Source: Lepidodermella squamata (taxonomy: Eukaryota > Animalia > Gastrotricha). Taken from it: 64,000 nt of DNA. Below are positions 1-63,015 of the stretch, piece after piece; position 1 is the stretch's first letter; each line of letters begins with the position of its first letter. The stretch is taken from assembly GCA_047495785.1 (NCBI GenBank), contig JBLDXI010000003.1, forward strand, positions 2,666,001 through 2,730,000, read 5' to 3'. Position numbers and translations under genes: made by a program. Below the pieces are notes generated by a model that worked only from the letters and a program-made list of their open reading frames with translations, searched no databases and was not told the origin of the DNA.

Positions 1-3000
1 GTTCGAAATTTCCTCCTCAAAACGAATTTACCATCATCGCTGATTTTCGATGTGATCGCCTTCAATCCAGATCAACCCAGCTTAATTTCGAAAATGAGTG
101 TAATCGTCGCAATTTCACCCTCGGAAGAAAAATCGAACGTATCGTCGCCCTGGGGTGAAAAAGATGAGCTGGAAATCCCGCTACCGGAAGATGTTCGGTC
201 TGCGATCGATTTGCCAGTCGAATCGATGAAAAATTCCGGATATTTCGCATTTTTCAACGAATCAGCCCAAAATTCTTTCTTAATCGACCACAAAACCGGT
301 CGATTATCGGCGAAAATCGATAAATTGGTCGAAAATACCGAACAAGGCGTTGAAACTCAGCTGGTTTATTTTTCACTTCCGAAACACCGATATTCGATGA
401 AAAAGCCGAAATTAGTCAAAATTCGAGTGCGGAGGAACCCGGAACGATGGCCATTGGCTAAATGTGAACGTGACAACTACTCGGCTAATATCAGCGATTT
501 GCTATGGACTTACGGTTCGGCGAATGCTGTTTTCGATATCGTCGAAATTCGAGCGATTTTCGCGAGAAAACAGCGATTCAACATCGCATTCGAACTGGTT
601 GCCAAGGACGCTGAAACTGCTTCGATGTTCCATATCGACCCTAAGTCAGGGCTAGTCCGGGCTCGGGTACCCAACCAGGCCCTACTACCCGACCACCTTA
701 ATTTCACGGTGACACCCAGGGTGACTCAGCAATGGACGGCTCCGACTGTGAATTGCTCGCTTCAAATCGGCGTTGCTAGGCACGCTTCGCTATTCCGTCA
801 GATTCTGCTGGGATTACAGCGTGTTGTTTCATTCGCCGAACTCGAGCAGTTAGAAATCGATGTTATGAATTATCGGCTCGGTTTCAAACTGTCCTACGAT
901 TGCATCGCTGAACAATCGAATTGCCGCGTGACTTTGATCCATGTCCCGACTGGAATCAGCCGAGAAATCTCGCTGAGCCTAATTTCTCAGCCGATTTCAG
1001 CAGCCCTGGGTCGTCGGAAAATTGCTGATCAATCAACGGCTTGTTCTTCGTCGAGTTCAAACCAAATCGGGTTGAGTTTTCCGAGTGATTTGAAAGGCGC
1101 TGGTTACTTGACGTCAATTCAAGACTCGTTCATCGACTACAAATTGGACGTTGAAGTTGGGCTGAGTAGGAAAATTGAGGTCGCCGTTCAATTCTCGCTG
1201 CCTCACTCCGAATTCGATCAAAGTGTTATGGAGCTGACGATGGGTGGTCAACAGCGTGATTCTATCGTGCTTTTGACTGCTAGTCGCAGGTCGATTTCAG
1301 CAAGATTGGTCGTCCAGGGACAGGAGGACCAAGTTCTTTCAGTCAATTTGGAGAGCATTTTCGAGAAAACGGGCCTGAGTGTTGCTGACGTGATCATCAC
1401 TGCTACCGATTCGGTAAATTTCCTATTAAAAAGACTATATTTAGAAATTGCAAAAAAAATAAAAAATATGAGGAACTAAATTTTAAAATTTTAATGAAAA
1501 AAATATTTAAAAATATAAAAATTTTGAAAATTTCTCAAAGTGAAAATAAATTGGGAGTTGAAGCGAGAAACTCATATTAAAATTTAAAATTTGAAAGAAT
1601 TAAGGTATTTTGTAATTCTTGGGATTTCAGTTCTGGAATTTGTTTGAAAAATTTAAAAAATTTAAAATTTTCAAATTTCAACAATTTTTTACGTTTTTTC
1701 GGAATAACTTCAACTTCAATTTTTAATTCCTATTCAAAATTTCTAAAAATAAGCGAGTATCAAATTTCTATTTTCAAAATGATGAAATTTTAATTATAAA
1801 TCCCTGATTTATAATTATTTTATTTTTTTATTCTTTAGTTTTGGTCATTCGAACTCGCAAACTGTCGATCTGATGCGTTGGAAGACCAAGGCCAGCAATG
1901 TTGGTACTGGCTACCATTCCGTCATTCTGGAAGCTCAAATTTCACCATCTCCCGCCTCAGTCGCATCCTAATCGGCTCAACCCGAATTTCAACCCGAACA
2001 GAGCGCTTTACGGGCTGTGTTCAACGCGTTCTCATCAACGGCGAGCTCGACCTGTTCCAACTTGAGGCAGCTGCCAAGTCCGGCCAAGTCACGTGGTCAC
2101 GCGAATGCTCGTGCCAAAACCGGACTCAAGCCCACCTGTGCCGCCTCAACAGCCCCCACCACCCGCCTATCAAATTTGACCCGAAAGGCAGCGATTTTAC
2201 GGAAATGGACTGGATGCCACTGGCGTTAGGGACGATTTTTTCGTTCCTAATCCTAGTCGGGGTGTTGATTGGCGGATTTTTGCTGAGGAATCGAATCATG
2301 ACATCGCCGCTATGCCTACGTCGCTATAGCAAGGCGGATAGCCACCATGACTACAGGGGTCGGTCGGTCTCAACCGACTCGCCCACAAGTTCGAGCGGAG
2401 AATTCGCGTTACCGTCCCGATCTCGCACCCTGATCAGCGGATCAGCCTCAGCCTTCGCCATGCAGGTCGTTATCGGCTCGTCGAATGGCACCGTCATCGT
2501 ACCCAGCCCGCCTAATTCCTGCGGCGATTCCGGGTTCATCGAGCAGAAGCAAACTACAACGGCTTTTGTGACAAGCCCAGCCACCTTAACGCCGACGGAT
2601 GAGTCGCAACTCGTCACGGATAACGAGCAGATGAATTTGACAGCGCCGAGGTCGAATTCGCAGCAGGAGCACCACCGCCAGTTGTGGGCGCTGAAAAGAT
2701 CGACCCTAGGCTCGAGATCGGCGAATTTCCAGCACAAACGGCCGAAACAGAAAATGTCGAGTAAAAACCGCGAAAATTTCAGCCCGCCGGCTATTTCGCG
2801 CCCGTCCGGCTACCCGTACGATAACAGCCACCACCAGCAGCCGTGGCAGGCGAGTAGCGAGTGGCAGTACGTACCCGGCGAGCCGGCGTCGCCGTCGAAA
2901 AAACGCGCCCAGACGTCGGTGCGCGGGTCGCGGGTGGCTAAGGCAGCGCCGAATTTGCCGCAGAAATCATCGCGGCAAAGCCACGCCGCGACTGTCTCGC

Positions 3001-3314
3001 GGGCGGTGGGTGAGCGGTTGAAAAAAGCGGCGCCCATCGCGCCTGAGGATCAAAATTTGTGGCAGGCCCTGTTAGCGGCGTCAGAGCCGCAGACGCAGGC
3101 GTCGAGTGTGTGCGATGGCGATTTTTACGTTCAAAATCGGCCGAAAACCGCGGCGGTTCCGACGCCGGTTGCGAATGCTAGGGCTCGCACGAGTAATCGG
3201 CTGGTTGCGGCGCCGAAATCTGCGTCGCCCAGTAAACGCCCGGCGGTGCCCGTCCACCCTAATCACACGCAGAGTTCTTCTTTTGGCTTCGACTCACCTG
3301 GTGTCTATTTGTAG
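1..3314 (+). CDS. 3' part of a FAT-like atypical cadherin (cadherin repeats, laminin-G-like domain, single TM, low-complexity cytoplasmic tail); 5' end outside window
   Basis: Frame is open from base 1. Cadherin-type strands FLIDHKTGRLS and FHIDPKSGLVR are present. A phase-0 GT-AG intron at 1414-1838 joins the two large ORFs in frame. It carries a LamG C-terminal signature RFTGCVQRVLING and a TM segment WMPLALGTIFSFLILVGVLIGGFLL. Confidence 0.7.
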
Positions 3315-18281: not shown

Positions 18282-19544
18282 TCACATCATTAATCCGATA
18301 AAAATAGAAATAACAACGCAACTGATGAGTATGATCGAGCCAAAGAACAAAAAGTCGAGCAGACGAATCTTCGTGACTTCCCAGCCGTCTACACCCATGA
18401 CCAAAACGCTTGATTTAAACGATTGTCGATGGGCTAATTCACACGAAATGCAAGTGTAAACTGTTATCACCATTCCGATAAAGATTTGAGATGAAATCAA
18501 CATCGCGGCGTAAGGAATTTGAGATGATTTTGGTATAGTTTCGTCAATTACTGATTGCAGAATAAAAAAAGCTAGCAACACGGTGATGCTGTAGCAGGGT
18601 CGATCGGGAGCTTTGGGTGGCAAAAACCAAGAAGCGAGTTGGAGGAGCATCAGGCATAAGCAGGGCAAAAACAGGTTGTTGACGTAGAAGGAAGCTTTCC
18701 GCTTAAATGAGAACGTGAAGTAGACGCGGTCGTAGTTGCCCTCCCAATTCGCATATGTCTGCTTCCTAATTGAAGAGCTAACGTTCGCCAGTGTCCAAAT
18801 CTCGCCGTCGTCTACAAAATCAATCAACGCTTGTTCCATTTCGACCCCAGCGCCATCCAATTGAAGTGCTACTATATATGACTCAACATAGCTTTCGAAA
18901 ACCATAGAGCAATCTTGCGAATCAAACGGGAATTTCGCCAGCCTATTACACGATTTTGAATATTTTTCTTTTCATGATGTAAGACTTACTTCATCTTGCA
19001 TTTCGAATTGAGCGTAGCGACGATTTGCCATAACATATTGCCGTTTTTGTAGATGTACATCGGAGTATACTGCGCCACGCTATAACAGAAACGTTCATAT
19101 TTTGCAAAGCCCTTCTCATTCTCATTTTCTCGCTTACGATGCGAAAAAATTTGCATCTGTAACAGCATTGTTATGCATCAGTTGAACTCGCCAGAACTTG
19201 GAAGCAGTATCTTGAATGCGATCGATTCTAGCGAACTCTGCCGTTTCGTTATAGCCCCATGAAATGCAGGGATGCTTCCAAGTGAAATCGATTTCAGTCA
19301 GAATAGAGAAGGTTTGCTCTTGATCTGCGATGTCTCGAAAGCCGTAAGGTACAATTTTCGACTTAACTACCAGTGGGTTCGAGTAGTTATCCACCGGTCT
19401 AGTATTGGTTTCCAGGCTGCATTTATCGTAAAGCCATTCTTTTAACATCTGTTCCTGAGCTTTGAAGGGATCATCCTCACTCCAATCAGCTGACAAGATA
19501 ACAATCAAATTACAAAGCTCGAAACAAAATATGTTGAACTTCAT
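18282..19544 (-). CDS. Cys-loop (pentameric) ligand-gated ion channel subunit, nAChR-like non-alpha, copy A
   Basis: Signal peptide, TRPV motif, spliced Cys-loop CKMKLAKFPFDSQDC, pre-M1 FKRKASFYVNNLFLPC, M2 DRPCYSITVLLAF, IPKSS, M3 and M4. Three exons. Confidence 0.9.
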
Positions 19545-23073: not shown

Positions 23074-23904
<831 letters not shown>

Positions 23905-28285: not shown

Positions 28286-31100
28286 TCATTTTCCTTTATG
28301 CCCCAAGGCCTTCTTTCTGTGGGCGGGCCCACGCGATTCGGTACTGCTACTGCTGCTTGAATCACTCGAAGTTCCAGAACTAGAACTCGAGCTAGACTGC
28401 CGTGCCCTGCGATGCCTGACCTTGCGACGCCTCATAGCGTCCAGAGCAGCAACAGAATTAGTACTGACAGTATCATTGCTTCTGTCGTCTTCCTCGTATT
28501 CTTCGTTCCAGATTACCCAGAAAGTTTCAACGCGACCTTTAGCATCGCTCTGAATCAAGAAAAGTAGGGACAAATAATTTAGGGGGGAAGAAAGTTTCAT
28601 ACATCATCGAAGTCAATAATCCCTCGGTGGCTGAAGTGAAGTTCGTAGTACTCAGATAGGTGCTTTGCAACACGGGCCGATACCAGAACGTTGAGAGGCA
28701 AGCTAAAGATGTGAACCAGCGATGTTGTTTGCAAAACTTCCCCGAAGATGCAAACGCGTGGTATTTGCAGGTGAACTATTCGAGAGAAGGCCGGACCAGA
28801 GTGAACCCCGATACGAACACAAATGTCTATATCATTCTCAGCATTATTTTCATTGTACTCGGCAAATCGATCACGAAGCTCCAGGCCGAGAAATACTAAC
28901 TCAGCGACTTGATCAAGCGACCGGCGCTCGCCAACACCCGCACATACACTAAGCGCATCGCCGTGAACATCGAGCTTAAAGCAGTTGAAACGCGACAAAG
29001 TTTCCTCGATAATAGCGTAGTAATTCTCCAGGAAATCAGCTAAAGCATTACCGTCTAGGGCTAAAATGACATTTTGCACGTTAGTCATGTCCATCATAAG
29101 TAGTGCTGTATCGCGGTAGTAGCGAATTTTCGGAATACGCATAGGATCTTTTGCGGTTTTAACCATTTGAGCAGGGACGTAGTCATATAACAGCTGGAAG
29201 GCTTCATTTAAACTTTCGAAATTGCGGTGAAATTCCAAAATTTGTCTGTGCAAACGAACGGTTCCAATAACATGAATCACCATATTTAGCAAGACAAAAA
29301 AGCATGCAACGACGAGAATGGCCAAAGCTAGAAACAATGAAAGCTTTGCTGAAATAGCGGGAATGGAAACTCACATATAACTCACATAAAACTTCAACTT
29401 CAGACCAAGAAGAAGCGTAATAATCCATAGAGGCTTTGACGTGACTTCGAAGTCGCGATAAAAACCAATTGACATTGCCGACTTGTGTTTGACAAGCGGA
29501 TGCAAATTCATCCGCATCGACTGAGACAAAGTCCAACTTATTGATCTAATAAAGGGAATGAAAGTTCAAACACTTTTGATTCTAAATACTAAATAGAAAC
29601 CTACGTATCTCCTTTGAATGTTTTCGATTTGTTTTTCAGATTCCTGATCGTCCGTAAGGTTTCGAACTTGATCATTTGAATACTCCGAGTCCAACGCAGC
29701 GATGGACATGTACTCGGTGTATCGCATGTAATAGAGTAAAATCGAGCGATAAACGGAGTCTTCAAATGTGACCGTACGGTCTATTATACGAAAAATTGTG
29801 TTACAAATTAATTATTTGACTTTGTCTCACTTTCAGCAGCCAGCTTTCTCGCAACTACGGCATATCGTTTCAGATTAAGAAGCTAGAATTGTTCGAAATA
29901 TTAAAAAATGCTTAGGAGTTTCATTGAGCTTACAGCTTGGAAAGTGTGAGTGGTTGCCAAATATTCTTGCCAGCCGAGAAACCTGGGGGCATCCAGCGTC
30001 AAAGAACGGCTGGCAAAAGCTAGGTTGTCAACCACTCGTGAATAAAAGGCGATCACACTAGCCTCGGTTGTACCATTAGGCGCCTTCCGTAAATCCCGCT
30101 GTGCGCGTATTGCCGTTCTTAAGGCTAGCGATGATGATACATTTACCCTATCATCAGGGGGCAAGAGCGCCAGTTCTTCTTCGTTCAGCCAAACGTCGAT
30201 CCAAATTAGCTTCTAAAATGGAGATGGGGACGATGGACTTATATTAAAATAACCTTTCAAACCGTATCAACCGCCTTTGTAATTGTTTGAGCCTTTTGCT
30301 GAAATTCCTATTAAAATACGTAATATGTAAAACCATTAAAAACTGGAAGACTTTACGTCGTAGGGCCCAATGTTGAATCTGAAATAATGTGTTAACTTTT
30401 AGCGCCATAATTATATCAAAACCTTACTCGTAGAAAGGGTCCATCTCTTGAGCCAGTAGCAAAGCCACATCGTATCTTCAAAAAAACATTAACAAAGTCA
30501 GCATTTGAAATAATAAAAAACGTACATTTCGAATGTCTTTTTATTCCTGGCCTGAAAAAATGAGTAAGGAAACTTGAATGTATTCCAGCTTGTTACAAAA
30601 AAGGCTTCACGTTGAGATCGTCGCTGCGGATGATTCTCAGACTGCTGAGCTCCACGTCAGTATAAAGTTGGACACCAATGCCAGCAATTGACAATGCTCC
30701 GAAAAATATTATCTGCAACGGACATTTCTCAATAGAAACCCCTAGATCGGGAAGCCATTAGTCTTACCACGATGACCAAAACAACTCGCCCTGTTGGATC
30801 AGCGACTTTTGGATTCAGGACTTCTAGAAAGTTGTTCATACAGCGATAACCGAAACCGAAGCGTTTCGCAAATTCGCTGCTGTCATCAGAAGAACTCGAC
30901 ACAGAACTCAACTGGTTGCTGTAGACATAGCCGTGCGCAGTTTTCACTGGAATGGCAACCGAGATAACGTCATCAGCAACTTTCGGCCTTGTATTTTCGT
31001 TTGGTTTGAACAAGCCATCGACTGGTAGCATCACGGCATCAGCTGATCTGGCTCGGCGAACAGTTTCGGAAACAACGTCAGCAAAGTTTGGCATTGCCAT
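28286..31100 (-). CDS. NIT-like 2-TM receptor with degenerate guanylate-cyclase-like domain, copy 6
   Basis: LNPKVADPTGRVVLVIV, SSSLALRTAIRAQRDLRKAPNGT, TM2, LLYDYVP, MMDMTN, KLDVHGDAL, VRIGVHSG, PRVCIFGEVLQTTSLVH, ETFWV and a Ser-rich basic tail. Confidence 0.88.
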
Positions 31101-31486: not shown

Positions 31487-32268
31487 TTATCTGTTTACAG
31501 GCGGTAGACCCCATGTTTTTCGTATCATCAACTCGAAGTGAGAGTCATCTTTGATGCCGGCAGAAACTGCGGAGTAGTAAAGCTCAAATTCATCTCGTGT
31601 AATCTATTAAATGTTTGCGTCAGAAAAGTAGATGACAGCTAAGCGTTAATGGAGCTTACTTTTCCGTCTTTTTCTGTTATGTCGAACTTTCTCAAAAATT
31701 CACTGTAGATTTGCTCATCGGTGGATTCGTCGATGATGTTTTGGGCATGAGATTTGATGCCTGCGTTCCCAGCAATGTCGACAACTTCAATTACGCCATT
31801 CTTATTCTTGTCCAACTGTTCGAACGTAGATGCTATGAATTCCTTACGTCTAGTCGAGAGGGGCGGCTATAATACGATTATAAAAGCCAAACTTATTCTT
31901 GATTATCATCGGAAATGAGGTCATTAGCCTTACCTTAAGTTTTTCTAAAAATTCTTCATATTCGATTCTTCCATCGCCATTAGCATCTAGCATCTTCATG
32001 AGCTCATCTGAAATTTAATAATAATAATTTTGGAGAAAATCTTTGGAGAATCAATAAACTAACCTATCTGTGATATACTTAATTGCAAGCCGTAGTCGCG
32101 CATACCTTTTGCTACCTCGCTAATGTCGAGCTTTCCATTTTTATCTTCATCGTAAATGCGAAATAGGCGACCGAGACCTTGAATGCCCGCAGTTCCTCGA
32201 GCCAAGCATTGACGCCGCAGCTGTACGAGTGGATTTTCAGCTTTTCGTGCTTGCTTTTTGAAAGACAT
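31487..32268 (-). CDS. Calcyphosine-like EF-hand protein, copy B (divergent)
   Basis: LRRQCLARGTAGIQGLGRLFRIYDEDKNGKLD and DEFELYYSAVSAGIKDDSHFELMIRKTWGL, with the same four-exon layout as copy A. Confidence 0.9.
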
Positions 32269-34935: not shown

Positions 34936-36769
34936 ATGATAGTTGCGCTATCAAAACTTACAACCAGGCGTCCTCTGGTTTGGTTTTTGGTGCTGACCGG
35001 TGCTGCAATCGTTTCCTATACATCAATCGTTTGGTCAGTATGTAGTCAGAAATCATGCCTCGAAATCCCTGGATTTTTCGGCCTTCAATCAAAATCTCTG
35101 CATGTATTTCAAGAAGATTTCGATGGCGGACTGGCAGATTACGTCATTAAAGACGATACAATCTCATCGATGATAAATGGCTTACAGCAAGTAATCGAAA
35201 ATCCTTATGCCCTTCAACACAAACAATATCACCGAGGCGCGCTGCAAGTCTACGGCAGCCAAAAGCGGATTCACAATGCGATTATGAAAGTGATCGCACC
35301 TGGGAAGCAGCGGCGGAAGCGAGAGTTTCGAATTGCACTAATAGGAGGATCATCTTCTGTGCCTCATGGAGTTGCTGTAATTTTTCATCCTTATTTTTGG
35401 ATTTTGTCAAACATTTTTAATTCTTTTAGCCTCATAAAAGCTACTACGCCCTCTTTTGCGGATGGCTCATGTACGCGTTCGGTACTGTTGAAGTCCAAGT
35501 CTACTGTGATAATTTCGCATTGGGTGCCACTGGCAGGTAAATCCAGCTTAATAATCTTAAATTTCTGAAATATTGATATTCCAACATAGCAATTATTACG
35601 CCCTGTGTCTCAACGAATTCATCAATGTTTCGAATTACGACATGCTGATAACTGAATTTGCGTTGAATGACGAGCATTTTATCAACACGAAGGCCAACAA
35701 TTACATACCCGACGGTGGACGGCCTTATGAAGAACTTGTCCGGTTAGCTCTGCATAAAAATCCTCATCTCCACATCGTCCCTGTTATTTTCACCCCGCTA
35801 CGCCATATGTTACTCCTGGACTACCCCGCCAAGTGCATGGATGTGAAAATCGATGATATTTACGCGGAAATATCGAAATATTACCAACTAACCTCCATTT
35901 ACTACAAGAATTTTTTCTGCGGACCTGACCGTAATATATCGACTCTAACGAAGTTGGAACAGGCGAAACTGGCCCAGCTCTACTTGTCAGAAATGGATGG
36001 AATGCACGCTGGCTTTAGAATTCATGCCATGCTAGCTGAATATCTTGTTTCCTACATCCGAACCACCCTGAGACAATTAGTTCAAAAGCTTCGCTTGGTC
36101 GACAGAAGCACGTTTTCTCCCGATATTGAAAAGCTCATTGATAACGAGAGAAGTGTTGTTACCCAGCAAACTGTTGAAACCTTAGAAAAGCCTCTCTATC
36201 CATCAACAAGGAGAAATTATGACTCGGAATGTCTAGTGAATTACATTAAGAAGGTTCGGAAGAACACCCGGCTATCGGACGGATTTCTCTGGTCGTCGAA
36301 GGATTTCAGTTTCGCGAGGAACGTATCTCTCGATTTTTTGAGAATCGTGAGATTGGCTGAACCGACATCTTTCGCTGACTTTAGCTTCAAAGGGATTTTC
36401 AAAAAGTCAATTTCAAACTGTGTCAATGGTTATATACCTCGAATAGGAATAGCCCATCACTTATGCAACTGCACTTCGGTTGGAAATCTCACGATACAAG
36501 CGAGATTTACGTTTTCGGATGGATCTGTGATTGAGAGGGATTTTTACATCCCCTTGGCGGTTACTGGATTCAAACCTAACTTCGTCCAATACGCAGACGC
36601 TGTTGAGAAGATGCCGGCATTCATAGCAGAGGACCCTTTCCCGACTGACAGGTTCTGCCGGCCTGATGCGCCAACGATTGATTCGCTGAGATTACGCCTC
36701 GAACAGCACAGTAAAGAGTTTTACCCAATGCGCATGAGCACAATAATCATTTATTACAATTGCTGCTGA
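34936..36769 (+). CDS. Type II membrane SGNH/GDSL-like hydrolase, 3 exons
   Basis: N-terminal TM. Block I IALIGGSSS, block II NFALGATGS (exon starting 35430), block III EFALND and block V DGMH are all present. Confidence 0.75.
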
Positions 36770-37065: not shown

Positions 37066-40019
37066 TTACTGCCGTTTTGGACTCTTGTTTTTCCGAGCAC
37101 GGCGTGGCTTTCGTGATGAGCTGCTGCTGCTACTGCTGCTACTGCTACTGCTACTGCTATTGCTGCTAGAGCTGCTTGAATTGCTAGAACTGCTCGAGCT
37201 TGAACTGGAACGCTGAACGACGTGGCGTCTCGGCTTGCGCTGCCTTAACGCATCCATCGCAGCGACAGAATTCACACTGACAGAGTCATTACTTCCATCC
37301 TCTTCTAGCATATTCTCATCAGACCAGACAACCCAATACGTCTCTACCCGTCCCTTAGCGTCGGACTGAAAGAAAAGTCTTCCTGATAGAATCAAAGAAA
37401 GAGACTCATTTCGTACCTCGTCGAAATCGATCACTCCACGATGAGTAAAATGAAGTTCCCCGTAGTCGGCTAAACGTCGGGCGACATTCGCCGTTACCAG
37501 TACATTCAAGGGCAAACAGAACATGTGAACCAAAGATGCTGTCTGCAGAACTTCTCCAGCCAGGCAGACTCTCGGAATTTGCAGGTGAACTATTCGAGAA
37601 TACGCAGGGCCAAAATGAACACCCATTCTTACGCAGATGTCTATTTCGTTCTCCTGATTATCTTCGTTGTATTCAGCAATTCGATCGCGGATCTCTAGAG
37701 CTAAGAAGACTAATTCAGCGACTTGATCCAACGATCTTCGTTCACCGACCCCAGCGCCAATACTAAAAAAGTCGCCGTGAACATCCAGTTTGAAGCAGTT
37801 AAATCGCGACATCGCTCTCTCCACCATTTGATAGTAAGTCTCAAGGAATTCGGTCAGTTCATTACCCTCAAGGGTAAGGATAACGCTTTGAATATTAGCC
37901 ATGTCCAGCATGAGCACAGCTGTGTCGCTGTAGTAGCGAATTTTTGGTATGCGCATGGGGTCTTTCGCGACTTTGGCCATTTGAGGTGGAAGGTAATCGT
38001 AGAGTAACTTGAAAGCCTCATTCAACGTCTGGAAATTCTTGTGAAATTCTATTATTTGATTTTGAAGGCGGACGGTTCCGACAACGTGGATGGCCACATT
38101 CATCAAAACAAAAAAGCAGGCTACGACAAGCATGGCCAAGGCTGAAATATAGTCTTTATTTATGGGCTATGAATTTGGTTTAAAAAAGTGCTTACAGAAG
38201 ACCGATTCTTCCGACCATGTGGAGGCGTAATAATCCATAGAAGCTTTCACTCGCCGTCGGAGTTGCGCGAGAAACCAGTTTATATTCACCTCCTGGGGCC
38301 TACATGCTGATTCGACCGTTTCCCCGCTAATCGAAGTGAAATCCAAAACATTGACCTATGAGTTGCTGTTGAATTATATCGTTCTGTAGGAAAGTTTTCC
38401 TTACGTATTTACGCTGCAGGATTTCAACCTGTTTATGAGCATCTTGGTCCTCTGTCAGGTTTCGAACCTGAGCTTCCGAGTAGTCAGAATCCAACGCGGC
38501 TATAGAAAGGAACTCTTCGTAGCGAATGAAATAAATGACGATTGCTTTGAAAATTGCATCGTCATAGCTAGTTACAGTTCGGTCTGAAAATCCGTCAAGC
38601 GTTAATTGGAAGAATTTGAGGCAGAATCTTACTTTCAGCAGCCAATTTCTTTAGAACAACAGTGTATCGTTTCAAATTTAACAGCTGTTTCGAGAATAAT
38701 AAATTGCGAGTTTCAATAAAGGAAAACTCTTATACCGCTTGAAATGTATGAAGAATAGCAAGAAATTCTTGCCAACCAGGAAAACGAGGTGCGTCCAAGG
38801 TAAGCGTTCGACTAGCATAGACAATGTTATCAGAGACCGTTGAGTAAAAATCTATGACGTTTTTTTCTACGGCAGTAGAGTTTAGTATAGCCATGATTGA
38901 AATTGATGATTCAAATCCATACCTGAAGTCCCATTTGGTGCCTTTCGAGTATCTCTCTGGGCCCGAAGTGCTGTTCTCAAAGCTAGGGATGATGAGATAT
39001 TCGCGCGAGCACCTGCAGGGAGCACGGATAAATCGTCCTCGTCCAGCCAAATGTCGATCCAAATCAATTTCTAAAAGTAAAATTACACACCAAACTACAT
39101 GAATTATCCAGTATTTACCGTATCAACCGCCTTGGTGTAAGTTTGCGCTTTTTGCAGAAAATCCTATCACGGAAAATTTGATAAATGTCTTAATTAAATT
39201 GGATCCGCTCCTATGGCATACGTCATATGGCCCTACGTTGAACCTGAAAAGGATAAATTTGAGACAATTTGATAATCGATGGTTTCAGATATTTTGATAG
39301 ACTCACTCGTAGAACGGATCCATTTCCTGAGCTAACAACAGAGCGACGTCATACCTAAACAGCAAATTTGATAATATATGCTAATACATCTGAAGTTTCA
39401 GCAACGCACATTTCCGATGTTTTCCTGTTCCTTAACTGCAATTAGGAAATGATAGTAAAATGCTATGAAATGCAATTAGGAAAGGAAGTAAACTAACATT
39501 GAGATCTTTACTGCGCAAAATTCGCAGGTTGCTAAGCTCAACATCGGTGTAGAGTTGGACTCCGATCCCAGCGACAGATAAGATTGCGGAGAAAGTGATC
39601 TATATGAGGGAGCTGTCTTCAATGTAGTCTTGGAATGAGGAAAAACTTACAACAAAAATCAGCACAGATCGTCCTGTGTCGCTGGAAACCTTTGGATTGA
39701 AGACATCCCAACACATGGCTAAGCAGCGTCGTGCGAATCTTGCTTTTAGGGCATAGTCACTGCTACTATCCGACGAGCTGGTCACCGCGCTGATTTGATT
39801 AACGTACCTATACCCTTCGAAGGTCTTCATTGGCACTGCGACCGAGATAACTTCGTCGTAATCTAAGGAACTGGTCTTCTTCTTTTTCTCCGTTGATTTC
39901 CCGGGCATTTCCAACCCAGATTCTGTAGTTTTCAGTACGGCATCAGCCGACTTGGCTCGTCGAACTGTCTCAGCAACGACGTCAGCAAAACCAGGCTTTT
40001 CAGGTTGAACTTTTGCCAT
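37066..40019 (-). CDS. NIT-like 2-TM receptor with degenerate guanylate-cyclase-like domain, copy 7
   Basis: Close paralog of copy 6 (FADVVAETVRRAKSADAV; AKDPMRIPKIRYY). MLDMAN, KLDVHGDFF, VRMGVHFG, PRVCLAGEVLQTASLVH and a poly-Ser tail. Confidence 0.88.
37118..37208 (-). repeat. Coding low-complexity repeat encoding poly-Ser in the copy 7 tail
   Basis: (ctg/cta)n tract on the + strand, equal to AGC/AGT codons on the - strand. Confidence 0.85.
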
Positions 40020-40241: not shown

Positions 40242-41492
40242 TCACATCATTAATCCAACCAAAACGGCAATCACAATGAAACATACAAAAGAAATAGAAC
40301 TGAAGAAAAGAACATCCAGCAAGCGAATTTTAGTTATTTCGAGACTCTCTACACCCATAACCAAAACGGTTTGTTTATAGCTCTTCCTTTGAGCTAATTC
40401 GCAAGAAATCCCTGTATAGACTGTGATGACCATGCCAATAAATATTTGAGAGGAAACTAAAATCGCTGCGTAAGGAGTTACAGACGATTTGGGAATGGTA
40501 TCATCAATCACAGACTGAAGAATGAAAAAAGCCAGAAGGACTGTTATACTATAGCACGGCCGATCAGCCGCTTTTGGCGGTAAAAAGCACGAAGAAAGCT
40601 GGAGGATCATGAGACAGCAACACGGCAGAAAGAAACCATTCACATAAAATGACGATTTTCGTTTGAAAGAGAACGTAAAGTAGATGCGGTCGTAATTACC
40701 ATCCCAGCTGGGGTAGGTTTGCTTCTTCGTCAAACAGCTGACATTGACAAGCGTCCAAATTTCTCCATCGTCAATGAAATCAACCAAAGCTCCTTCCATT
40801 TCAATGCCTTTGCCATCTATTATCAGGGCGATTATGTAAGATTCGAAATAGCTCTCGAAAACAATGGAGCAGTCTTGCGTGTCAAACGGAAACTTTGAGA
40901 GCCTGGCAAATCAACTCAGGTTTTTGAAATATCAGGATAATTCTGAAAACATACTTCATTTTACATTTCGACTCAACTGTTGCTACAATTTGCCACAGCA
41001 TGTTGCCATTCTTGTAAATGTACATGGGCGTAAATTCAGCAACACTAGATTGAAATTTCCTGTAAACAAGAATTAGAAGAGCATGAAAACTTACCGAGCG
41101 AGAAAATTAGCATCTTCTACGGCATTATTGTGCATTAGCTGAACTCGCCAAAATTTATTGGCGGTATCTTGAATTCGATCGATTCTAGAATAAGTTGCAG
41201 TATCATTCGACCCCCATGAGATGCACGGGTGGTTCCATGTGAAGTCGATCTCAGTCAAAATGGAGAAGCTTTGTTCCTGATCTTTTATCTCTCGAAAGCC
41301 GTAGGGAAGCACCTTTGCTTTGACTTGCAATGGCTGCGAGTAATTGTTAACTGGTCGGGTGTTCACATCGAGGCTGCATTTGGTGTAGAGCCATTCTTTC
41401 AGCTCCTGTTCTTGTGATTTAAATGGATCATTTTCACTCCAATCAGCTGAGATTCGGGGGACGAAGGCAAGAAGGACCAGAGGAACAATCAT
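40242..41492 (-). CDS. Cys-loop ligand-gated ion channel subunit, nAChR-like non-alpha, copy B
   Basis: Clear paralog of 18282-19544 with the same intron positions. Cys-loop CKMKLSKFPFDTQDC and M2 DRPCYSITVLLAFFILQSVIDD. Confidence 0.9.
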
Positions 41493-51364: not shown

Positions 51365-53101
51365 ATGCCTTTGGGGAAAATGGGAGGAACGCTGATTTTA
51401 TTTTTAGCCTTATCCACAATTTTTATGGTTCGGTGTGAGTTCTTGCATCGTTTCGGTAAAATCGCCCTACCATCGGTACCGACAGGTCGGAAAAAAGTGT
51501 TAGCAGTAAGTGCTGTTTCCGTACCTAGCCGAGTGCATGAAATCAACGTAAGTTCCATCGCGTTCATCTACGAAACCACGCTCGACGAAAAGTTCAACAT
51601 AACCGTCCACATCGAGGGGCGATCTTTGATTTCAACAAGCACTTGGGACAACATTAAGGAAGCATTCACATTCAAAATCTCTTACGAAATTACCGAATCG
51701 ACTGTTACAGTGCGTTACGATAGGTCGCTGTTACATTCATTGGCAATCAGCCAGAATTGCTTTGAATCCTCACTTTACAAATGGAAGACAATGGATTCAG
51801 CGAAAAACACGAGGCATGCCTTGATTTTAGACCTGCCATCTAGGCGTAACCCGGAATTTTTCAGACCATTCCTTTACTTGTACGAGTCAAACGACAAAGT
51901 CGCTAGGCTTCATCGGCCTAATGTCCCTAAATCATTGTGTTCATGTCCTGTTATCGATTCCGCGTCCATTGTCACTCAAATCGATAGTCTCGTTATAGAA
52001 TTCGACAATTGGTACTCTAACGTTTCTGTTTACGTTGATTACTGGCGAGCTTACGAGTTAGTTAACGCCTTAGGATCGGCTGATTTGAACTATTCTAAAA
52101 TAGAGGACCATTACTATCAATCTTCTGGCGGATGTTCGATGAACTGCCAGCCATATGTCATGACTTACAAATCACCATTGGATACTACTAATGCAGTGAC
52201 AACTTACATGTCTTACGAATGCCGAGAGCCGGGGAAGCTTCATTCTTGGTGGTTATGCGCTAATCAAGGTTTCCAACTCGAAGAGAAGAATCGGTACTCA
52301 AGGAGTCGGATTGGAGTTGCAACGTCTTGGCGGCATTACTATTTAGTAAGCTGCTTAGACTATTGGCCCAATGCCAAAGAAGGCGATGAATTTCGATGGT
52401 TGTGGTTTGATGAAAGATTCGGAGCTTACAGGCCATTCCCTGTGGTTTCGTTCAACGAAGTTATCGGCGACTTTGACCTCAAAAATGGGACGCTGGAACT
52501 GCCAGTTGCTACGACGGAATTCGACCAAGTTCCGCCAGAGGCCTATACGACCTATAGATGCGAGTTGTTCCCGGATGGAAATCTCACAAAAATTATCGTG
52601 CAGGACCTTCGCTACGAAGATTTCAGTGATTATGTCCATTCATGCGAATGGTCGGATCCTGAAAACCGTGAAACTATCTATATCACATGTGTTGCCGATA
52701 TTAAGATTCTTAATAGCACCGTCTCTCTGAGGAGATACGTCAAACTCCTTGAGTACATCGATCTTGGTGCGAGAGATTGGGTAGCTCTGATACCTGAATT
52801 GAAAGTGCAACCAGAAGGAGCGAGTGAAGGCCAAATTTGGCTCCTGTTCAGTGTCACGACACAGTCAGTTGACGAGTCGATAACATCTTACCCACCATCC
52901 AGGGCTGTATACCGAGTCGGGTTGTATGTAATTGATGACGATGGCGAAATCCTATTGCTGATCAACGATTTCACAATAACAAGTAGTAAAAAGCAACCTG
53001 TATTAGCTGCTGAATTGTCTAACAACTCATCTTTGAATTACTTCAATTTATGTTTGATTACTACAACTTTGTTTGCGCCACTAATAAAGCTTTATTATTG
53101 A
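51365..53101 (+). CDS. Orphan intronless secreted or GPI-anchored surface protein (578 aa)
   Basis: Long uninterrupted ORF with a hydrophobic signal sequence, multiple Cys and NxS/T sites, and a hydrophobic C-terminus after SNNSS. No domain recognised. Confidence 0.7.
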   Translation: MPLGKMGGTLILFLALSTIFMVRCEFLHRFGKIALPSVPTGRKKVLAVSAVSVPSRVHEINVSSIAFIYETTLDEKFNITVHIEGRSLISTSTWDNIKEAFTFKISYEITESTVTVRYDRSLLHSLAISQNCFESSLYKWKTMDSAKNTRHALILDLPSRRNPEFFRPFLYLYESNDKVARLHRPNVPKSLCSCPVIDSASIVTQIDSLVIEFDNWYSNVSVYVDYWRAYELVNALGSADLNYSKIEDHYYQSSGGCSMNCQPYVMTYKSPLDTTNAVTTYMSYECREPGKLHSWWLCANQGFQLEEKNRYSRSRIGVATSWRHYYLVSCLDYWPNAKEGDEFRWLWFDERFGAYRPFPVVSFNEVIGDFDLKNGTLELPVATTEFDQVPPEAYTTYRCELFPDGNLTKIIVQDLRYEDFSDYVHSCEWSDPENRETIYITCVADIKILNSTVSLRRYVKLLEYIDLGARDWVALIPELKVQPEGASEGQIWLLFSVTTQSVDESITSYPPSRAVYRVGLYVIDDDGEILLLINDFTITSSKKQPVLAAELSNNSSLNYFNLCLITTTLFAPLIKLYY

Positions 53102-53228: not shown

Positions 53229-54584
53229 ATGTTTTTTAGATGGCCTCCCTTCAGGATGGTCATCTGGCTAGCTCTAAGCCTCGTGATAGCATCTGTGATC
53301 ATTGCTCTGAAGAGGCATTTAGTTAGAAATGTCAGATCTGTCCATGATTACACCAGTTTTGAAGAGACCTGCGAAAATGAACGATCGACCTATGCATGCA
53401 ATAACCTTTTATTGTCAAAAATCGGCTCAAACCTCCCGCCATTACGTCAGTTCAACAAGGAGAATTTAATAGATCTGAGGAAGGTGTTACTAGTCGTCTA
53501 CTTCAAAGAAGCTCACTACTCATCAGCCGGCAAAATATACGCGCTTTACAGCAAAGTCTTCTCGGATGTTGTGTTCTGCGGACCTAGCGGTTACTTATTC
53601 TGGCCTAGGACGAATGAGGCTCTCAAATCGATCCCTATGTACAGCGTACCTCAATACACTCGTTTTGTTACATACTCTCCGCCTGCGACTTACAAGTGTC
53701 TTGACGCTAGTCTATCAGCTTTTCCTAAGCATGAATACTTTAAAGGAGTTCTGGTGATGGCGGATGATGTCTTGTTAAATTACTGGAATTGGAAGAGTGA
53801 CTTCAACCTCAAGAAACCATGGATTGTTAACGTATCGCCCTACCGTTCAGCTTTCAATGTCGAAAACGCAAGTCTCAATCTTCAAATGATTGATTCAGAT
53901 TTTATTTTGTTTTTATTAGGGTACGTTTTGTATTCAGCCCTATATGTATCCATTCGATGAAAAAACAAAGTGCGCCGAAAATTTTTGGCTAGGTGGATGG
54001 AGTGAATATGAGAAGAATAAGGCTTATTTCAGCTCGTTTTATTCCGACCTGGAACGTCTCGTTTCTTGGAAAAGAGCTTTCAAAAACCTCACTTTAGTCT
54101 CAGGTGGGGAAGGAAGGTTATTTCGAGGACCCAGTGAGATTTACTACATTCCAAGCAAATACTTGGATGGTATCCGGCGATTATTCCGACTGATGGAAAA
54201 GTAAGTGATGTCAGCTTTCGAAATGAACTACAAAAATATAAATTTTTCAGGCATGGTATGATTTCTGAAGTTGCAGTATCCACAGCTATCCATATCGTTG
54301 TTAAATTCGGAGAAATTCAGTACTTTCATGATAATGACGAAAGTTCTCGTGACTCAAAGCTTCCATTCATTGAGGCTTATCAGAAACGCTACCACCACTT
54401 TCATCCGCTTGAGATGGCTAATGTGTTCCCCGATCTGGAGAGACAAATAGACGCAGCCCTTTTCAGTAAATCTCGAAAAGCAACTGTCGCTGACAACACC
54501 GTTACTTGCGTGTATTGCTACCTGCTTCAACTTTCTCAAAGTTATCATGGCGCTTTTAGCGCTAGCCACAACATTAAACATTAG
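53229..54584 (+). CDS. STELLO/DUF288-like type II membrane putative glycosyltransferase, copy A, 3 exons
   Basis: N-terminal TM. LLVVYF...LYSKVFSDVVFCG, YKCL, GVLVMADDVLLNYWN, SEIYYIP, SEVAVST and HHFHPL. Confidence 0.7.
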
Positions 54585-61584: not shown

Positions 61585-63015
61585 ATGTGTTTTCATAAAC
61601 TATTATGTTTTAAATGGATGTTCGCGTTCGTATTGCTCGTATCGATTCTTGTATTATGGTTTCACTTGGAAGTTTCAAAGAGAGCCTTATGTAACGTTAA
61701 ATTGACAGTTTTTCCGGAAAGCTACAGCAACTTCAAGAATGAATGTAAGGTAGAACGAGATTCTCGTGTTTGCAGCGGTATGCTCAACATTCGAAAGAAA
61801 CAATGGCATGATGGCTCGTCATTCAAGCGAGAAGAATTGTTCGATTTGAGGAACGTGCTGCTAGTTATCCAGTTTGGCGAACCTACTTATGTTGCCGCCT
61901 CAAAACTTCTGTCGCTCTATAGTGGAATTTTCGCTGACGTTGTCTTCTGTGGGTCTAACAATGATTTCTGGCCAAAACATCCGGGGACTAACCTTACCGA
62001 CAAGCTACTAACCGTTCCAGTGGATACAAGATTTGTGTCATACGGAATGCCGACGAAACACTTTGGAGAAAACGCTTATATCTGCTTGGACTTGGCTTTG
62101 GAAGACGATAAACGAGCTACAGATTACGATGGAATCCTCGTAGCGGCAGATGATGTAATTCTAAATGTTTGGACTTGGAGAGATGCTAATCTTAGCCTGA
62201 ACAAAAACTGGCTAATCAAAGTTACAGATTACTTACGAGTTTTCAAGCTTGAAAATGTTAGAACTACCATTTATATTTCAGTGAAAGTCGTATAACTATC
62301 ACAATTTTAGGGTCACTTTTGCAATGGAACGACGTCAAACAACGATAAAGACTGCCTGGCAGAGGTTTGGCCAGAGACGTGGCGTTGGTGCAAGACCTAC
62401 AAAAATGAGATGAGAAGTTTCTACGATCAATTGAAGCAGCTTGCCAGCAAAAATAAAGCTGACAGTTTCTGGCCTCAGACCTTCAATGAACTTACAAAAT
62501 CTGCCCATGGGGAAAATCGTCTCTTCAGAGGTTTGGCTGATGTTTTCTACGTCTCGAACAAATATCTAACCCAAATTCGACCCATACTGAGACTTCTCAG
62601 CAAGTTGTTACTACCCTTTACCTATTCCAAGTGTTTTAGGTTTGCGTTTAACAGAAACAGAGTTTGGCTTGAAGCCGGGGTTGAAACAGCAGTAAGGATT
62701 GTCTCTCCTCCAGAAGACATTCAACTGCTTCAACTTGACGGTAACGATTACGGCCATGGTCATACTGTTCGAAGGAATTACATGATCAACGGCTATGCAT
62801 CGTACTACCAATACATTCATCCATTCAAAATGAGCCAGGTCTTCAAAGAACGCATCAAAAGTGCCCGATTTCGATACGATGAGTCACGTCTCCATCTTCA
62901 TAGCATAAACCGCAATCATTTCAAGCAAGGGGATTGGACGATCTCTTGTGTCTATTGTTACTTGTTGAAGCTGTTTTCGTCCTACAAAACTGCTATAGAT
63001 TCTTTGAATACGTAG
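61585..63015 (+). CDS. STELLO/DUF288-like type II membrane putative glycosyltransferase, copy B
   Basis: Paralog of 53229-54584: DLRNVLLVI, LYSGIFADVVFCG, YICL, GILVAADDVILNVW, RLFRG, YIHPFK and CVYCYLL. Confidence 0.7.

What the first reader, a model, noticed from the sequence alone, without database searches (positions are those of the whole stretch)
29820..30480. The NIT-like ectodomain keeps the scaffold but appears to have lost the nitrate-binding Arg motifs
Seen (copy 6 as example): VALLLAQEMDPFYE...KAVDTKLIWIDVW...SSSLALRTAIRAQRDLRKAPNGT...VIAFYSRV...GWQEYLA...FQALLNLKRYAVVARKLA. Recalled NIT pattern: LVHxLQxERG...TD...WP...LxxxR...FYT...W...KExxGxERA, with the ERG and ERA Arg residues binding the anion. 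Here the first Glu is kept but is followed by M/S/A/L instead of R, and the second motif becomes LKRY or FKQY. A new conserved block (QRD/ExRKxxNG) is shared by the complete copies. Inference: the ligand is probably not nitrate/nitrite.
Basis: inference. Interest (0 to 1): 0.7.

Follow-up and report, generated by a model that had tools for sequence, protein, structure and literature searches.

The report
Diverged NIT sensor missing one arginine
The outer sensor of this animal membrane receptor is a very distant relative of the nitrate-sensing NIT domain that has lost one of the two arginines needed to hold nitrate and probably kept the other, so it most likely senses something other than nitrate or nitrite, which nobody has tested.

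Summary
The peptides quoted are all present on the minus strand of 29820-30480. They belong to exons 3-7 of an apparently intact 11-exon gene (copy 6 of about 11 tandem paralogs; at least 25 copies in this 121-Mb genome).

The ectodomain is homologous to the NIT domain of animal NIT guanylyl cyclases, but only profile-profile comparison shows it:
- largest ectodomain exon: E 5.6e-6 locally, 1.9e-5 with the remote tool;
- tiled alignment of unjoined exon translations: E 6.3e-8 over 238 colinear columns (reversed control 0.35);
- Pfam finds no NIT exon by exon.

The second motif's arginine position lies seven residues after the quoted LKRY. It is Arg in copy 6 and in 12 of 28 copies, with moderate alignment confidence. 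The "new" QRD block is centred on a helix-3 Arg that is invariant in canonical NIT cyclases.

Because R50A alone abolishes NasR's nitrate response, canonical nitrate binding is unlikely, but an anionic ligand is not excluded.

The cyclase domain lacks the catalytic Asn/Arg pair.

The scan has met this family repeatedly elsewhere in this genome.

The parts
28289..31100 (-). Whole gene, copy 6 of the array. It has 11 exons: N-terminal cytoplasmic tail, TM1, an ectodomain of about 290 aa, TM2, a signalling helix, a cyclase-homology domain and a Ser-rich tail.
   Evidence: Exon ends, phases and GT-AG sites were read from the DNA. Paralog exon map. PF00211 on the cyclase exon.
30428..30475 (-). Exon 3, helix 1 of the sensor (YDVALLLAQEMDPFY). 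The Met codon at 30442-30444 sits where canonical NIT domains have the E-R-G arginine (NasR R50).
   Evidence: In the tiled hhalign, family E aligns with canonical E and the canonical 'RG' lies opposite a gap. An ungapped column scan places this block best of 244 positions on LVHxLQxERG, z 3.5. Residue table.
30357..30378 (-). Exon 4, a mini-exon (FNIGPYD). It is a family-specific conserved N-x-G-P-Y-D turn between helices 1 and 2.
30263..30307 (-). Exon 5, helix 2 (EFQQKAQTITKAVDT). Its VDT aligns with the canonical 'TD' motif.
29934..30212 (-). Exon 6 (93 aa). It holds the W(P) loop, helix 3 with a basic ladder (R32, R36, R39, R42, K43; the R39 codon is 30096-30098), the N-G-T sequon, helix 4 with FYS, and the start of helix 5 (GW).
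   Evidence: hhalign against canonical NIT cyclase ectodomains: E 5.6e-6 and E 1.9e-5 with independent alignments. AlphaFold2 model of this exon: pLDDT 80.6, helices 28-43, 50-74 and 81-92. Column counts.
29831..29882 (-). Exon 7, continuation of helix 5 (LLNLKRYAVVARKLAAE). The Arg codon at 29847-29849 is the probable equivalent of the canonical E-R-A arginine (NasR R176). The Lys that follows is K or R in all 28 copies.
   Evidence: Tiled hhalign: K of NLK aligns with K of 'KE', and the variable R/K/S/T column aligns with the canonical Arg, with a 4-residue family insertion upstream. Residue table. The block alone is not significant.
29386..29780 (-). Exons 8 and 9 (29780-29605 and 29536-29386): the second four-helix bundle of the sensor, with a conserved N-L-T sequon.
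   Evidence: hhalign of this block against canonical columns 148-251: E 2.3e-3, colinear, reversed control 0.27.
28603..29348 (-). Exon 10: TM2, signalling helix and cyclase-homology domain. Both metal-binding Asp residues are kept. The transition-state Asn and Arg are replaced by Gln and Leu.
   Evidence: PF00211 at E 5.8e-20 but only 72 bits. Alignment to GC-C 8fx4 and NPR1. All 11 paralogs matched lack the Asn and the Arg.

Best explanation
The stretch encodes helices 1 to 5 of the extracellular sensor of a two-pass membrane receptor. The receptor belongs to a large, lineage-specific, very divergent branch of the animal NIT-domain guanylyl cyclases.

The NIT scaffold (two helical bundles between two membrane helices) is kept, but the ligand site at the helix 1 / helix 5 interface is rebuilt:
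- The helix-1 arginine that NasR needs for nitrate (R50) is Met in this copy and non-Arg in 24 of 25 genomic copies.
- The helix-5 arginine position (R176) is variable among paralogs (R, K, S, T, G, Q, H) and is probably still Arg in this copy.
- Helix 3 carries an invariant ladder of basic residues around the Arg that canonical NIT cyclases also conserve.

The most likely working model is that the sensor no longer binds nitrate or nitrite in the canonical two-arginine way and has diversified among paralogs towards other, still unknown and possibly anionic, ligands. Binding would be passed through TM2 and the signalling helix to a cyclase-homology domain. That domain keeps only the metal-binding half of the active site, so output needs a complementing cyclase partner or is non-catalytic.

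Shown here: gene structure, homology, and residue identities at the aligned positions. Inferred: loss of nitrate binding, ligand diversification, and the partner requirement.
For: - **Architecture and gene model.**
- **Cyclase kinship.** The best full-length relatives of the cyclase exon among 1.84 billion proteins are NIT cyclases. All 10 tested carry PF08376 plus PF00211.
- **Ectodomain homology.** The exon-6 profile against the canonical NIT cyclase ectodomain gives E 5.6e-6 and 1.9e-5 with independent MAFFT alignments and the remote hhalign. Exons 8-9 give E 2.3e-3 at the colinear place. The tiled alignment of unjoined exon rows gives E 6.3e-8 locally and 1.4e-10 globally over 238-241 columns, end to end. 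Reversed-template controls give 0.27-0.53. A paralog exon gets a weak Pfam NIT hit at the right profile positions (13.5 bits, E 0.096).
- **Link to the solved structure.** The canonical profile hits NasR 4AKK at E 9.7e-14, which ties ERG to R50 and ERA to R176.
- **Functional analogy.** R50A and R176A each abolish the nitrate response of a NasR-based sensor (PMC9581486). E175/R176 on helix 5 belong to the predicted pocket (PMC7496416).
- **Residue tables.**
- **Half-site cyclase.**
Against: - No single exon of copy 6 reaches any NIT model by HMM-to-sequence search.
- The two motif-bearing exons are not significant on their own.
- The register of helix 5 rests on a moderate-confidence part of one profile-profile alignment plus motif spacing. 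A crude ungapped column scan does not single it out.
- No whole-domain structure could be modelled, because the joined spliced protein was not to be used. It is therefore unknown where the Met, the helix-5 Arg and the helix-3 ladder sit in space.
- The single-exon model found no fold match.
- Intron 9 of copy 6 is only 37 nt, against about 50 nt for the others.
Confidence: 0.68

Rival explanations
1. The sensor still detects nitrate, nitrite or another NO-derived anion through a rebuilt basic site. The retained helix-5 Arg or Lys and the invariant helix-3 ladder (R36, R39, R42, K43) would replace the lost helix-1 Arg.
For: - Arg sits at the aligned R176 position in copy 6, and Arg or Lys in 17 of 28 copies. 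The next residue is always K or R.
- Helix-3 basic residues are invariant in 31 of 31 rows, and their central Arg is also invariant in canonical NIT cyclases.
- In NasR a helix-7 Arg (R236), the pseudo-symmetry mate of helix 3, contributes to the response.
- Six of 15 Pfam-type NIT cyclases in the public set lack the second Arg, so the site tolerates change.
Against: - R50A alone makes the NasR sensor unresponsive.
- The helix-1 Arg is invariant in all 15 canonical NIT cyclases examined but is absent from 24 of 25 copies here.
- The location of the helix-3 ladder relative to the pocket could not be determined.
Confidence: 0.17
2. The ectodomain no longer binds a small ligand. It serves as a dimerisation or partner-selection scaffold for half-site cyclase subunits, or the array is a set of decaying receptor genes.
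For: - The cyclase domain has lost its catalytic Asn and Arg in every copy examined.
- Pocket positions vary among paralogs.
- Copy 6 has an unusually short 37-nt intron.
Against: - All 10 introns of copy 6 keep GT-AG and correct phase, with no stop in any exon.
- Many ectodomain columns are invariant across at least 28 copies and in a second species from metagenomes, including three glycosylation sequons.
- Variation concentrated at canonical ligand positions is what diversifying receptors show.
- Earlier scan notes report transcription of family members (not tested here).
Confidence: 0.1
3. The ectodomain is not NIT-derived. It would be an unrelated double helical-bundle sensor that resembles NIT by chance or by convergence.
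For: - There is no Pfam NIT hit above threshold.
- PF08376 scanned in six frames over the genome finds only a coiled-coil ORF.
- PDB sequence and fold searches with the exon-6 profile and model do not find NasR.
Against: - The profile-profile match is end to end and colinear at E 6.3e-8, with clean reversed controls.
- An independent tool and independent alignments reproduce it.
- The WP, LxxxR, FY and W landmarks align in order.
- The attached cyclase domain is closest to NIT cyclases.
Confidence: 0.05

Closest known systems
Animal NIT-domain guanylyl cyclases (placozoan NIT-GCs, Moroz et al. 2020, PMC7400543; Platynereis NIT-GC1/2, Jokura et al., doi 10.1101/2023.08.02.551600)
   Same: The architecture TM - helical sensor - TM - signalling helix - class III cyclase domain is the same, with no kinase-homology domain. 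These are the best full-length relatives of the cyclase exon. The ectodomain aligns colinearly, with WP, LxxxR, FY and W kept.
   Different: - The helix-1 Arg, invariant in 15 of 15 canonical members, is Met, Ala, Leu, Ser or Phe here.
- The Glu before the second Arg is lost, and there is a 4-residue insertion in helix 5.
- Pfam NIT is not detectable.
- The cyclase domain scores about 70 bits instead of 210-230 and lacks the catalytic Asn/Arg.
- Moroz et al. reported that placozoan NIT domains keep the bacterial critical residues. This family does not.
NasR NIT domain (PDB 4AKK)
   Same: It is the reference fold for the domain: two four-helix bundles with the ligand site between helix 1 (R50) and helix 5 (E175/R176). 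Canonical NIT cyclases match it at E 9.7e-14, and this family matches them.
   Different: NasR is a soluble bacterial protein coupled to an ANTAR RNA-binding domain. Both of its arginines are present and each is required. Here the R50 equivalent is Met.
Bacterial NIT domains that bind no nitrate or nitrite (Monteagudo-Cascales et al. 2023, Mol Microbiol 119:739, as cited in PMC12236503)
   Same: They are a precedent for a NIT scaffold that need not sense nitrate and whose ligand is unknown.
   Different: They are bacterial chemoreceptors. I could not read that paper, so I do not know which residues differ there.
Half-site class III cyclase subunits (adenylyl cyclase C1, soluble guanylyl cyclase alpha)
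   Same: The metal-binding Asp pair is kept, and the transition-state Asn/Arg is absent from the same chain.
   Different: Those subunits have known complementing partners. No partner was sought or found here.
NarX/NarQ and McpN nitrate sensors
   Same: They are helical-bundle sensors that hold nitrate with arginines.
   Different: They are different domain families. McpN's sensor is a PilJ domain (title of PMC6381276, seen), not a NIT domain as the finding implies.

Membership tests
NIT domain (Pfam PF08376) | A match to the family model above its gathering score (24.9 bits) | tested here: not met
   Exon by exon, copy 6 gives no NIT hit at E up to 1. The best hit in the family is a paralog exon at 13.5 bits, E 0.096, on profile positions 57-129. 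The joined protein was not scanned, by rule.
NIT domain (Pfam PF08376) | An all-helical domain of about 240 aa, colinear with known NIT domains, lying between two membrane helices in receptors | tested here: met
   The tiled exon profile against the canonical NIT cyclase ectodomain covers 238 columns, query 1-254 on template 8-252, at E 6.3e-8. Exon 6 folds as helices at pLDDT 80.6. TM1 and TM2 flank the domain.
NIT domain (Pfam PF08376) | Helix-1 E-R-G arginine (NasR R50) | tested here: not met
   It is Met in copy 6 and non-Arg in 24 of 25 genomic copies.
NIT domain (Pfam PF08376) | Helix-5 E-R-A arginine (NasR R176) | tested here: inconclusive
   Arg occupies the aligned column in copy 6, and R in 12 of 28 copies. 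The preceding Glu is lost, and the register has only moderate support.
NIT domain (Pfam PF08376) | Binds nitrate and/or nitrite | not testable with these tools
   This needs purified protein.
Animal NIT guanylyl cyclases | TM - NIT - TM - cyclase architecture without a kinase-homology domain | tested here: met
Animal NIT guanylyl cyclases | Cyclase domain most closely related to those of NIT cyclases | tested here: met
   Ten of ten of the best full-length hits tested carry NIT plus Guanylate_cyc. Identity is only 21-26%.
Animal NIT guanylyl cyclases | Complete catalytic residue set of a homodimeric guanylyl cyclase | tested here: not met
   Both Asp and the Cys are kept. Glu is replaced by Asp, Asn by Gln and Arg by Leu. 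The same loss is seen in all 11 paralogs matched.
Animal NIT guanylyl cyclases | Invariant ectodomain columns of the canonical set (Q14, E16, R17, T43, R76, Y93 of alignment A2) | tested here: not met
   E16, R76 and Y93 are kept. Q14, R17 and T43 are not.

The most novel reading that the evidence does not exclude
The family is a lineage-specific chemoreceptor repertoire built on the NIT fold. The nitrate pocket was opened by replacing the helix-1 Arg with a hydrophobic residue. The helix-5 position then diversified among dozens of paralogs to read different small ligands, possibly anionic ones held by the invariant helix-3 arginine ladder. Each receptor would signal by pairing its half-site cyclase domain with a complementing cyclase subunit.
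Probability: 0.2. Interest if true: 0.7.

Novelty: new variant of a known kind. Interest (0 to 1): 0.45.

Why it matters
NIT guanylyl cyclases are the only animal receptors proposed to read nitrate, nitrite or NO outside the haem-based soluble cyclases. The published view is that animal NIT domains keep the bacterial ligand-binding arginines.

This family is a large expanded branch in which the arginine invariant in every canonical member examined is gone, and the second is variable. That shows the fold has been re-used for something else in at least one animal lineage. It also warns against reading every NIT-like cyclase as an NO or nitrate sensor.

The family offers natural variants (one paralog keeps E-R, and many keep the second Arg) for testing which residues set ligand specificity. 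The result is sequence inference only, and the scan has already described the family several times in this genome.

Tried and rejected
- **Pfam, exon by exon.** No NIT hit for copy 6. A second round on longer natural exons of paralogs gave only one sub-threshold NIT hit.
- **Word-index protein search** with the 357-aa cyclase ORF of copy 7: blank (length window 196-625 aa).
- **Exhaustive search** with the cyclase exon: only fragments at 38% identity, and no full-length member of this family in the library.
- **HMM of canonical NIT cyclase ectodomains** against all open segments of the window: nothing significant.
- **PF08376 in six frames over the genome:** one hit, on a coiled-coil ORF, taken as spurious.
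- **ESM Atlas features on exon 6:** no score above 0.80.
- **hhalign of the helix-1 block and the helix-5 block alone:** not significant.
- **Crude ungapped column scan:** supports the helix-1 register but not uniquely the helix-5 register.
- **PDB sequence search with the exon-6 profile:** NasR not found.
- **Foldseek of the exon-6 model against the PDB:** no match at E 0.001 or better, as expected for a three-helix fragment.
- **MAFFT alignments for folding the second bundle** (A1, A3) put exon-8 rows under exon-7 columns, so I did not fold them.
- **Monteagudo-Cascales 2023** is not held in the library.
- **Rejected:** 'FCK', 'ESK' and similar exon-end conservation as protein motifs. They are splice-donor read-through.
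Full report
**What is there.** The window is eukaryotic DNA with very short introns (about 50 nt). A tblastn of the copy-6 exons against the window finds about eleven tandem paralogs on the minus strand. They start near 7443, 11969, 15156, 20331, 25081, 28289 (copy 6), 37228, 42530, 45666, 54916 and 63489.

The finding's coordinates cover five short exons of copy 6. I read exon ends, phases and splice sites from the DNA. The gene has 11 exons:
- 31100-30768 (cytoplasmic N-terminus)
- 30712-30597 (TM1)
- 30475-30428, 30378-30357, 30307-30263, 30212-29934, 29882-29831, 29780-29605 and 29536-29386 (ectodomain)
- 29348-28603 (TM2, signalling helix, cyclase domain)
- 28549-28289 (last cyclase strands and a Ser-rich tail)

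All ten introns are GT-AG with compatible phases, and no exon holds a stop.

**A caution on exon-end conservation.** Several residues that look conserved at exon ends are translated splice-donor consensus and are not in the protein: V after VDT, VS after FQA, SK after KLAxE, and CK after the final F.

**Family size and relatives.** The largest ectodomain exon has 48 six-frame matches in the 121-Mb assembly, on nine contigs. I fetched 20 further stretches and recovered 25 copies with a readable helix-1 exon and 28 with a readable helix-5 exon.

A related family occurs on AT-rich animal contigs of two metagenome assemblies, ERZ23486787 and ERZ27333047. Earlier notes of this scan describe the same family many times in this genome as divergent, transcribed, half-site NIT-type receptor cyclases. 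One note guesses that the animal is a gastrotrich. I did not test transcription or the animal's identity.

**Is the ectodomain NIT-like?** Direct searches say nothing:
- Pfam on each exon finds only Guanylate_cyc on the cyclase exon, at E 5.8e-20 and 72 bits.
- The word-index search is blank.
- The exhaustive search with the cyclase exon finds no full-length member of this family, only fragments at 38% identity.

The best full-length hits of that exhaustive search (21-26% identity) are NIT guanylyl cyclases. Many carry L-Q-x-E-R-G, and all ten that I scanned have PF08376 NIT plus PF00211 at 210-230 bits.

From 15 of these hits I built a canonical NIT cyclase ectodomain alignment. I compared it with alignments of the family's exon translations:
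- The 93-aa exon 6 profile matches canonical columns 46-129 at E 5.6e-6, probability 85.6%.
- The remote hhalign reproduces this on independently built alignments A4 and A2, at E 1.9e-5 and in the same register.
- The exon 8-9 profile matches columns 148-251 at E 2.3e-3.
- Reversed-template controls give E 0.27-0.53.

I then made a tiled alignment. Every row is one unjoined natural exon translation, placed in genomic order. A few paralog open segments that happen to span two blocks serve as bridging rows. This profile aligns with the canonical one end to end: 238 columns, query 1-254 on template 8-252, E 6.3e-8 locally and 1.4e-10 globally. The reversed control gives 0.35.

One paralog exon also gets a weak Pfam NIT hit at the right profile positions (13.5 bits, E 0.096).

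I conclude that the ectodomain descends from the NIT domain of NIT cyclases but lies beyond the reach of the Pfam model.

This is why there is no whole-domain structure here.

**The two arginines.** The canonical profile hits NasR (4AKK) at E 9.7e-14. The alignment puts L-Q-x-E-R-G on NasR L-Q-C-E-R-G (R50) and K-E-x-x-G-x-E-R-A on K-E-L-A-G-Q-E-R-A (R176). In a NasR-based nitrate sensor, R50A and R176A each abolish the response, while R49A and R236A weaken it (PMC9581486). E175/R176 on helix 5 are part of the predicted pocket (PMC7496416).

*Helix 1.* In the family the block reads [YF]-D-x-x-x-L-L-x-x-E-M-x-P-F-Y.
- In the tiled alignment the Glu pairs with the canonical Glu, and the canonical R-G lies opposite a gap.
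- A simple ungapped column scan places this block best of 244 positions on x-L-V-H-x-L-Q-x-E-R-G, with Met under Arg, z 3.5.
- The residue there is M, L, S, M, M, M, M, A, A, L, A in window copies 1-11.
- Over the 25 genomic copies it is M16, A4, L2, S1, F1 and R1. The single Arg is in the paralog on contig C23, which reads L-L-V-D-E-R-D.

In the tiled alignment the Lys of N-[LF]-K pairs with the Lys of canonical K-E. Seven residues on, the family column before an invariant K/R pairs with the canonical Arg. The flanking V, L and A pair with canonical I, L and G. The family has a 4-residue insertion just upstream.

That column is Arg in copy 6 (V-V-A-R-K-L-A). Over 28 copies it is R12, K5, S3, T3, G2, Q2 and H1. 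The S/T state is confined to one closely related subgroup (window copies 3, 5, 8, 9 and 11, plus one copy on contig C20). Arg occurs in copies on four contigs, so Arg is probably the ancestral state of the family (inference).

Support for this register is moderate:
- The block alone is not significant.
- A crude ungapped scan ranks the register 9th overall, although it scores about 10 units better than the no-gap alternative.

Six of the 15 canonical, Pfam-type NIT cyclases also lack the second Arg, whereas all 15 keep the first.

**The 'new' QRD block.** Helix 3 of the family reads L-A-L-R-x-A-L-R-A-Q-R-D-x-R-K-x-P-N-G-T. The counts in 31 rows are:

| Position | Residue | Rows |
|---|---|---|
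| 32 | R | 27 of 31 |
| 36 | R or K | 31 of 31 |
| 39 | R | 31 of 31 |
| 42 | R | 31 of 31 |
| 43 | K or R | 31 of 31 |

R39 aligns with the Arg of the canonical L-x-x-x-R motif, which is invariant in the 15 canonical sequences (R76 of A2) and aligns with an Arg of NasR. The centre of the block is therefore inherited. What is new is the extension into a ladder of basic residues spaced i, i+4, i+7, i+10/11 on one face of the helix.

N-G-T, N-[IVL]-[ST] and N-L-T are conserved sequons, which fits an extracellular location.

An AlphaFold2 model of exon 6 alone (alignment A4) is helical: pLDDT 80.6, helices at 28-43, 50-74 and 81-92. As a fragment it finds no fold match. The tools do not return coordinates, so I could not tell whether the ladder faces the ligand cleft.

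**Output domain.** Aligned to GC-C (8fx4) and NPR1, the cyclase domain keeps both metal-binding Asp residues and the guanylyl-type Cys. Gln and Leu stand in place of the transition-state Asn and Arg. In all 11 paralogs matched by pattern, the Asn position is P, Q, E, K or T and the Arg position is L, I, M or V. This is the C1/alpha-like half of a class III active site. These proteins are unlikely to make cGMP as homodimers.

**Reading.** The scaffold claim holds, and loss of the first Arg holds. Loss of the second does not hold for copy 6. The QRD Arg is not new.

By analogy with R50A, canonical nitrate or nitrite binding is unlikely. However, the remaining basic residues leave room for an anionic ligand.

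The variability of exactly the two canonical ligand positions among dozens of otherwise well-conserved paralogs fits a diversified receptor repertoire. NIT domains without nitrate binding are already known in bacteria (PMC12236503, citing Monteagudo-Cascales 2023).

I rate this a new variant of a known kind, of moderate interest, and already met by the scan elsewhere in this genome.

Noticed in passing
window 28603-29348 (-), and the same exon of all paralogs: The cyclase-homology domain keeps both metal-binding Asp residues but has Gln/Leu (P/Q/E/K/T and L/I/M/V in paralogs) in place of the catalytic Asn/Arg. It scores only about 70 bits on PF00211, against 210-230 for canonical NIT cyclases.
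   Followed up: partly
window 29349-29385 (-): Intron 9 of copy 6 is only 37 nt, while the other nine introns are 49-121 nt and the same intron is 54 nt in copies 3 and 7. Splicing could be impaired in this copy. No RNA check was possible.
   Followed up: no
window exon ends, e.g. 29383-29388, 29826-29831, 29928-29933: Apparently conserved 'FCK', 'ESK', 'AVS' and 'DTV' peptide ends across paralogs are the translated GTAAG/GTGAG donor consensus, not protein. In-frame stop-free introns make copies 1, 3 and 8 look intron-poor.
   Followed up: yes
L008 (G000:C23:197500-203000), minus strand 2910-3116: The one paralog found that still reads L-L-V-D-E-R-D in helix 1 (Arg kept) and has helices 1-2 in a single exon. 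It is a natural revertant-like comparator for ligand tests.
   Followed up: partly
window 18282-19544 (-) and 40242-41492 (-): Two Cys-loop ligand-gated channel genes (weak Neur_chan_LBD and Neur_chan_memb hits) lie inside the receptor array, each just downstream of a cyclase-receptor copy. EF-hand genes at 23632-23904 and 32059-32268 are similarly repeated. This suggests segmental duplication of a multi-gene block.
   Followed up: no
window 58441-60744 (+): A single-exon 767-aa ORF has an ANF_receptor ligand-binding region followed by hydrophobic helices, like a class C GPCR. It lies next to the array.
   Followed up: no
window 53229-54584 (+) and 61585-63015 (+): Two paralogous gene pairs have an N-terminal signal-anchor and no Pfam match. 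The large ORFs at 51365-53101, 35573-36769, 52-1479 and 1878-3314 also have no Pfam match.
   Followed up: no
L001 (G000:C38:519084-522329): The only six-frame PF08376 hit in the genome (26.8 bits) falls on a Gln/Glu-rich coiled-coil ORF and looks spurious. No canonical NIT exon was detected in this genome by that scan.
   Followed up: partly
L010, L011, L012 (ENA assemblies ERZ23486787 and ERZ27333047): AT-rich animal contigs in metagenome assemblies carry the same family (E-M in helix 1, same exon order). In L010 helices 5 to 8 lie in one natural exon.
   Followed up: partly
window 28289-28500 (-) and 37066-37230 (-): Copies 6 and 7 end in long Ser-rich, basic low-complexity tails that the other copies examined do not obviously share.
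   Followed up: no
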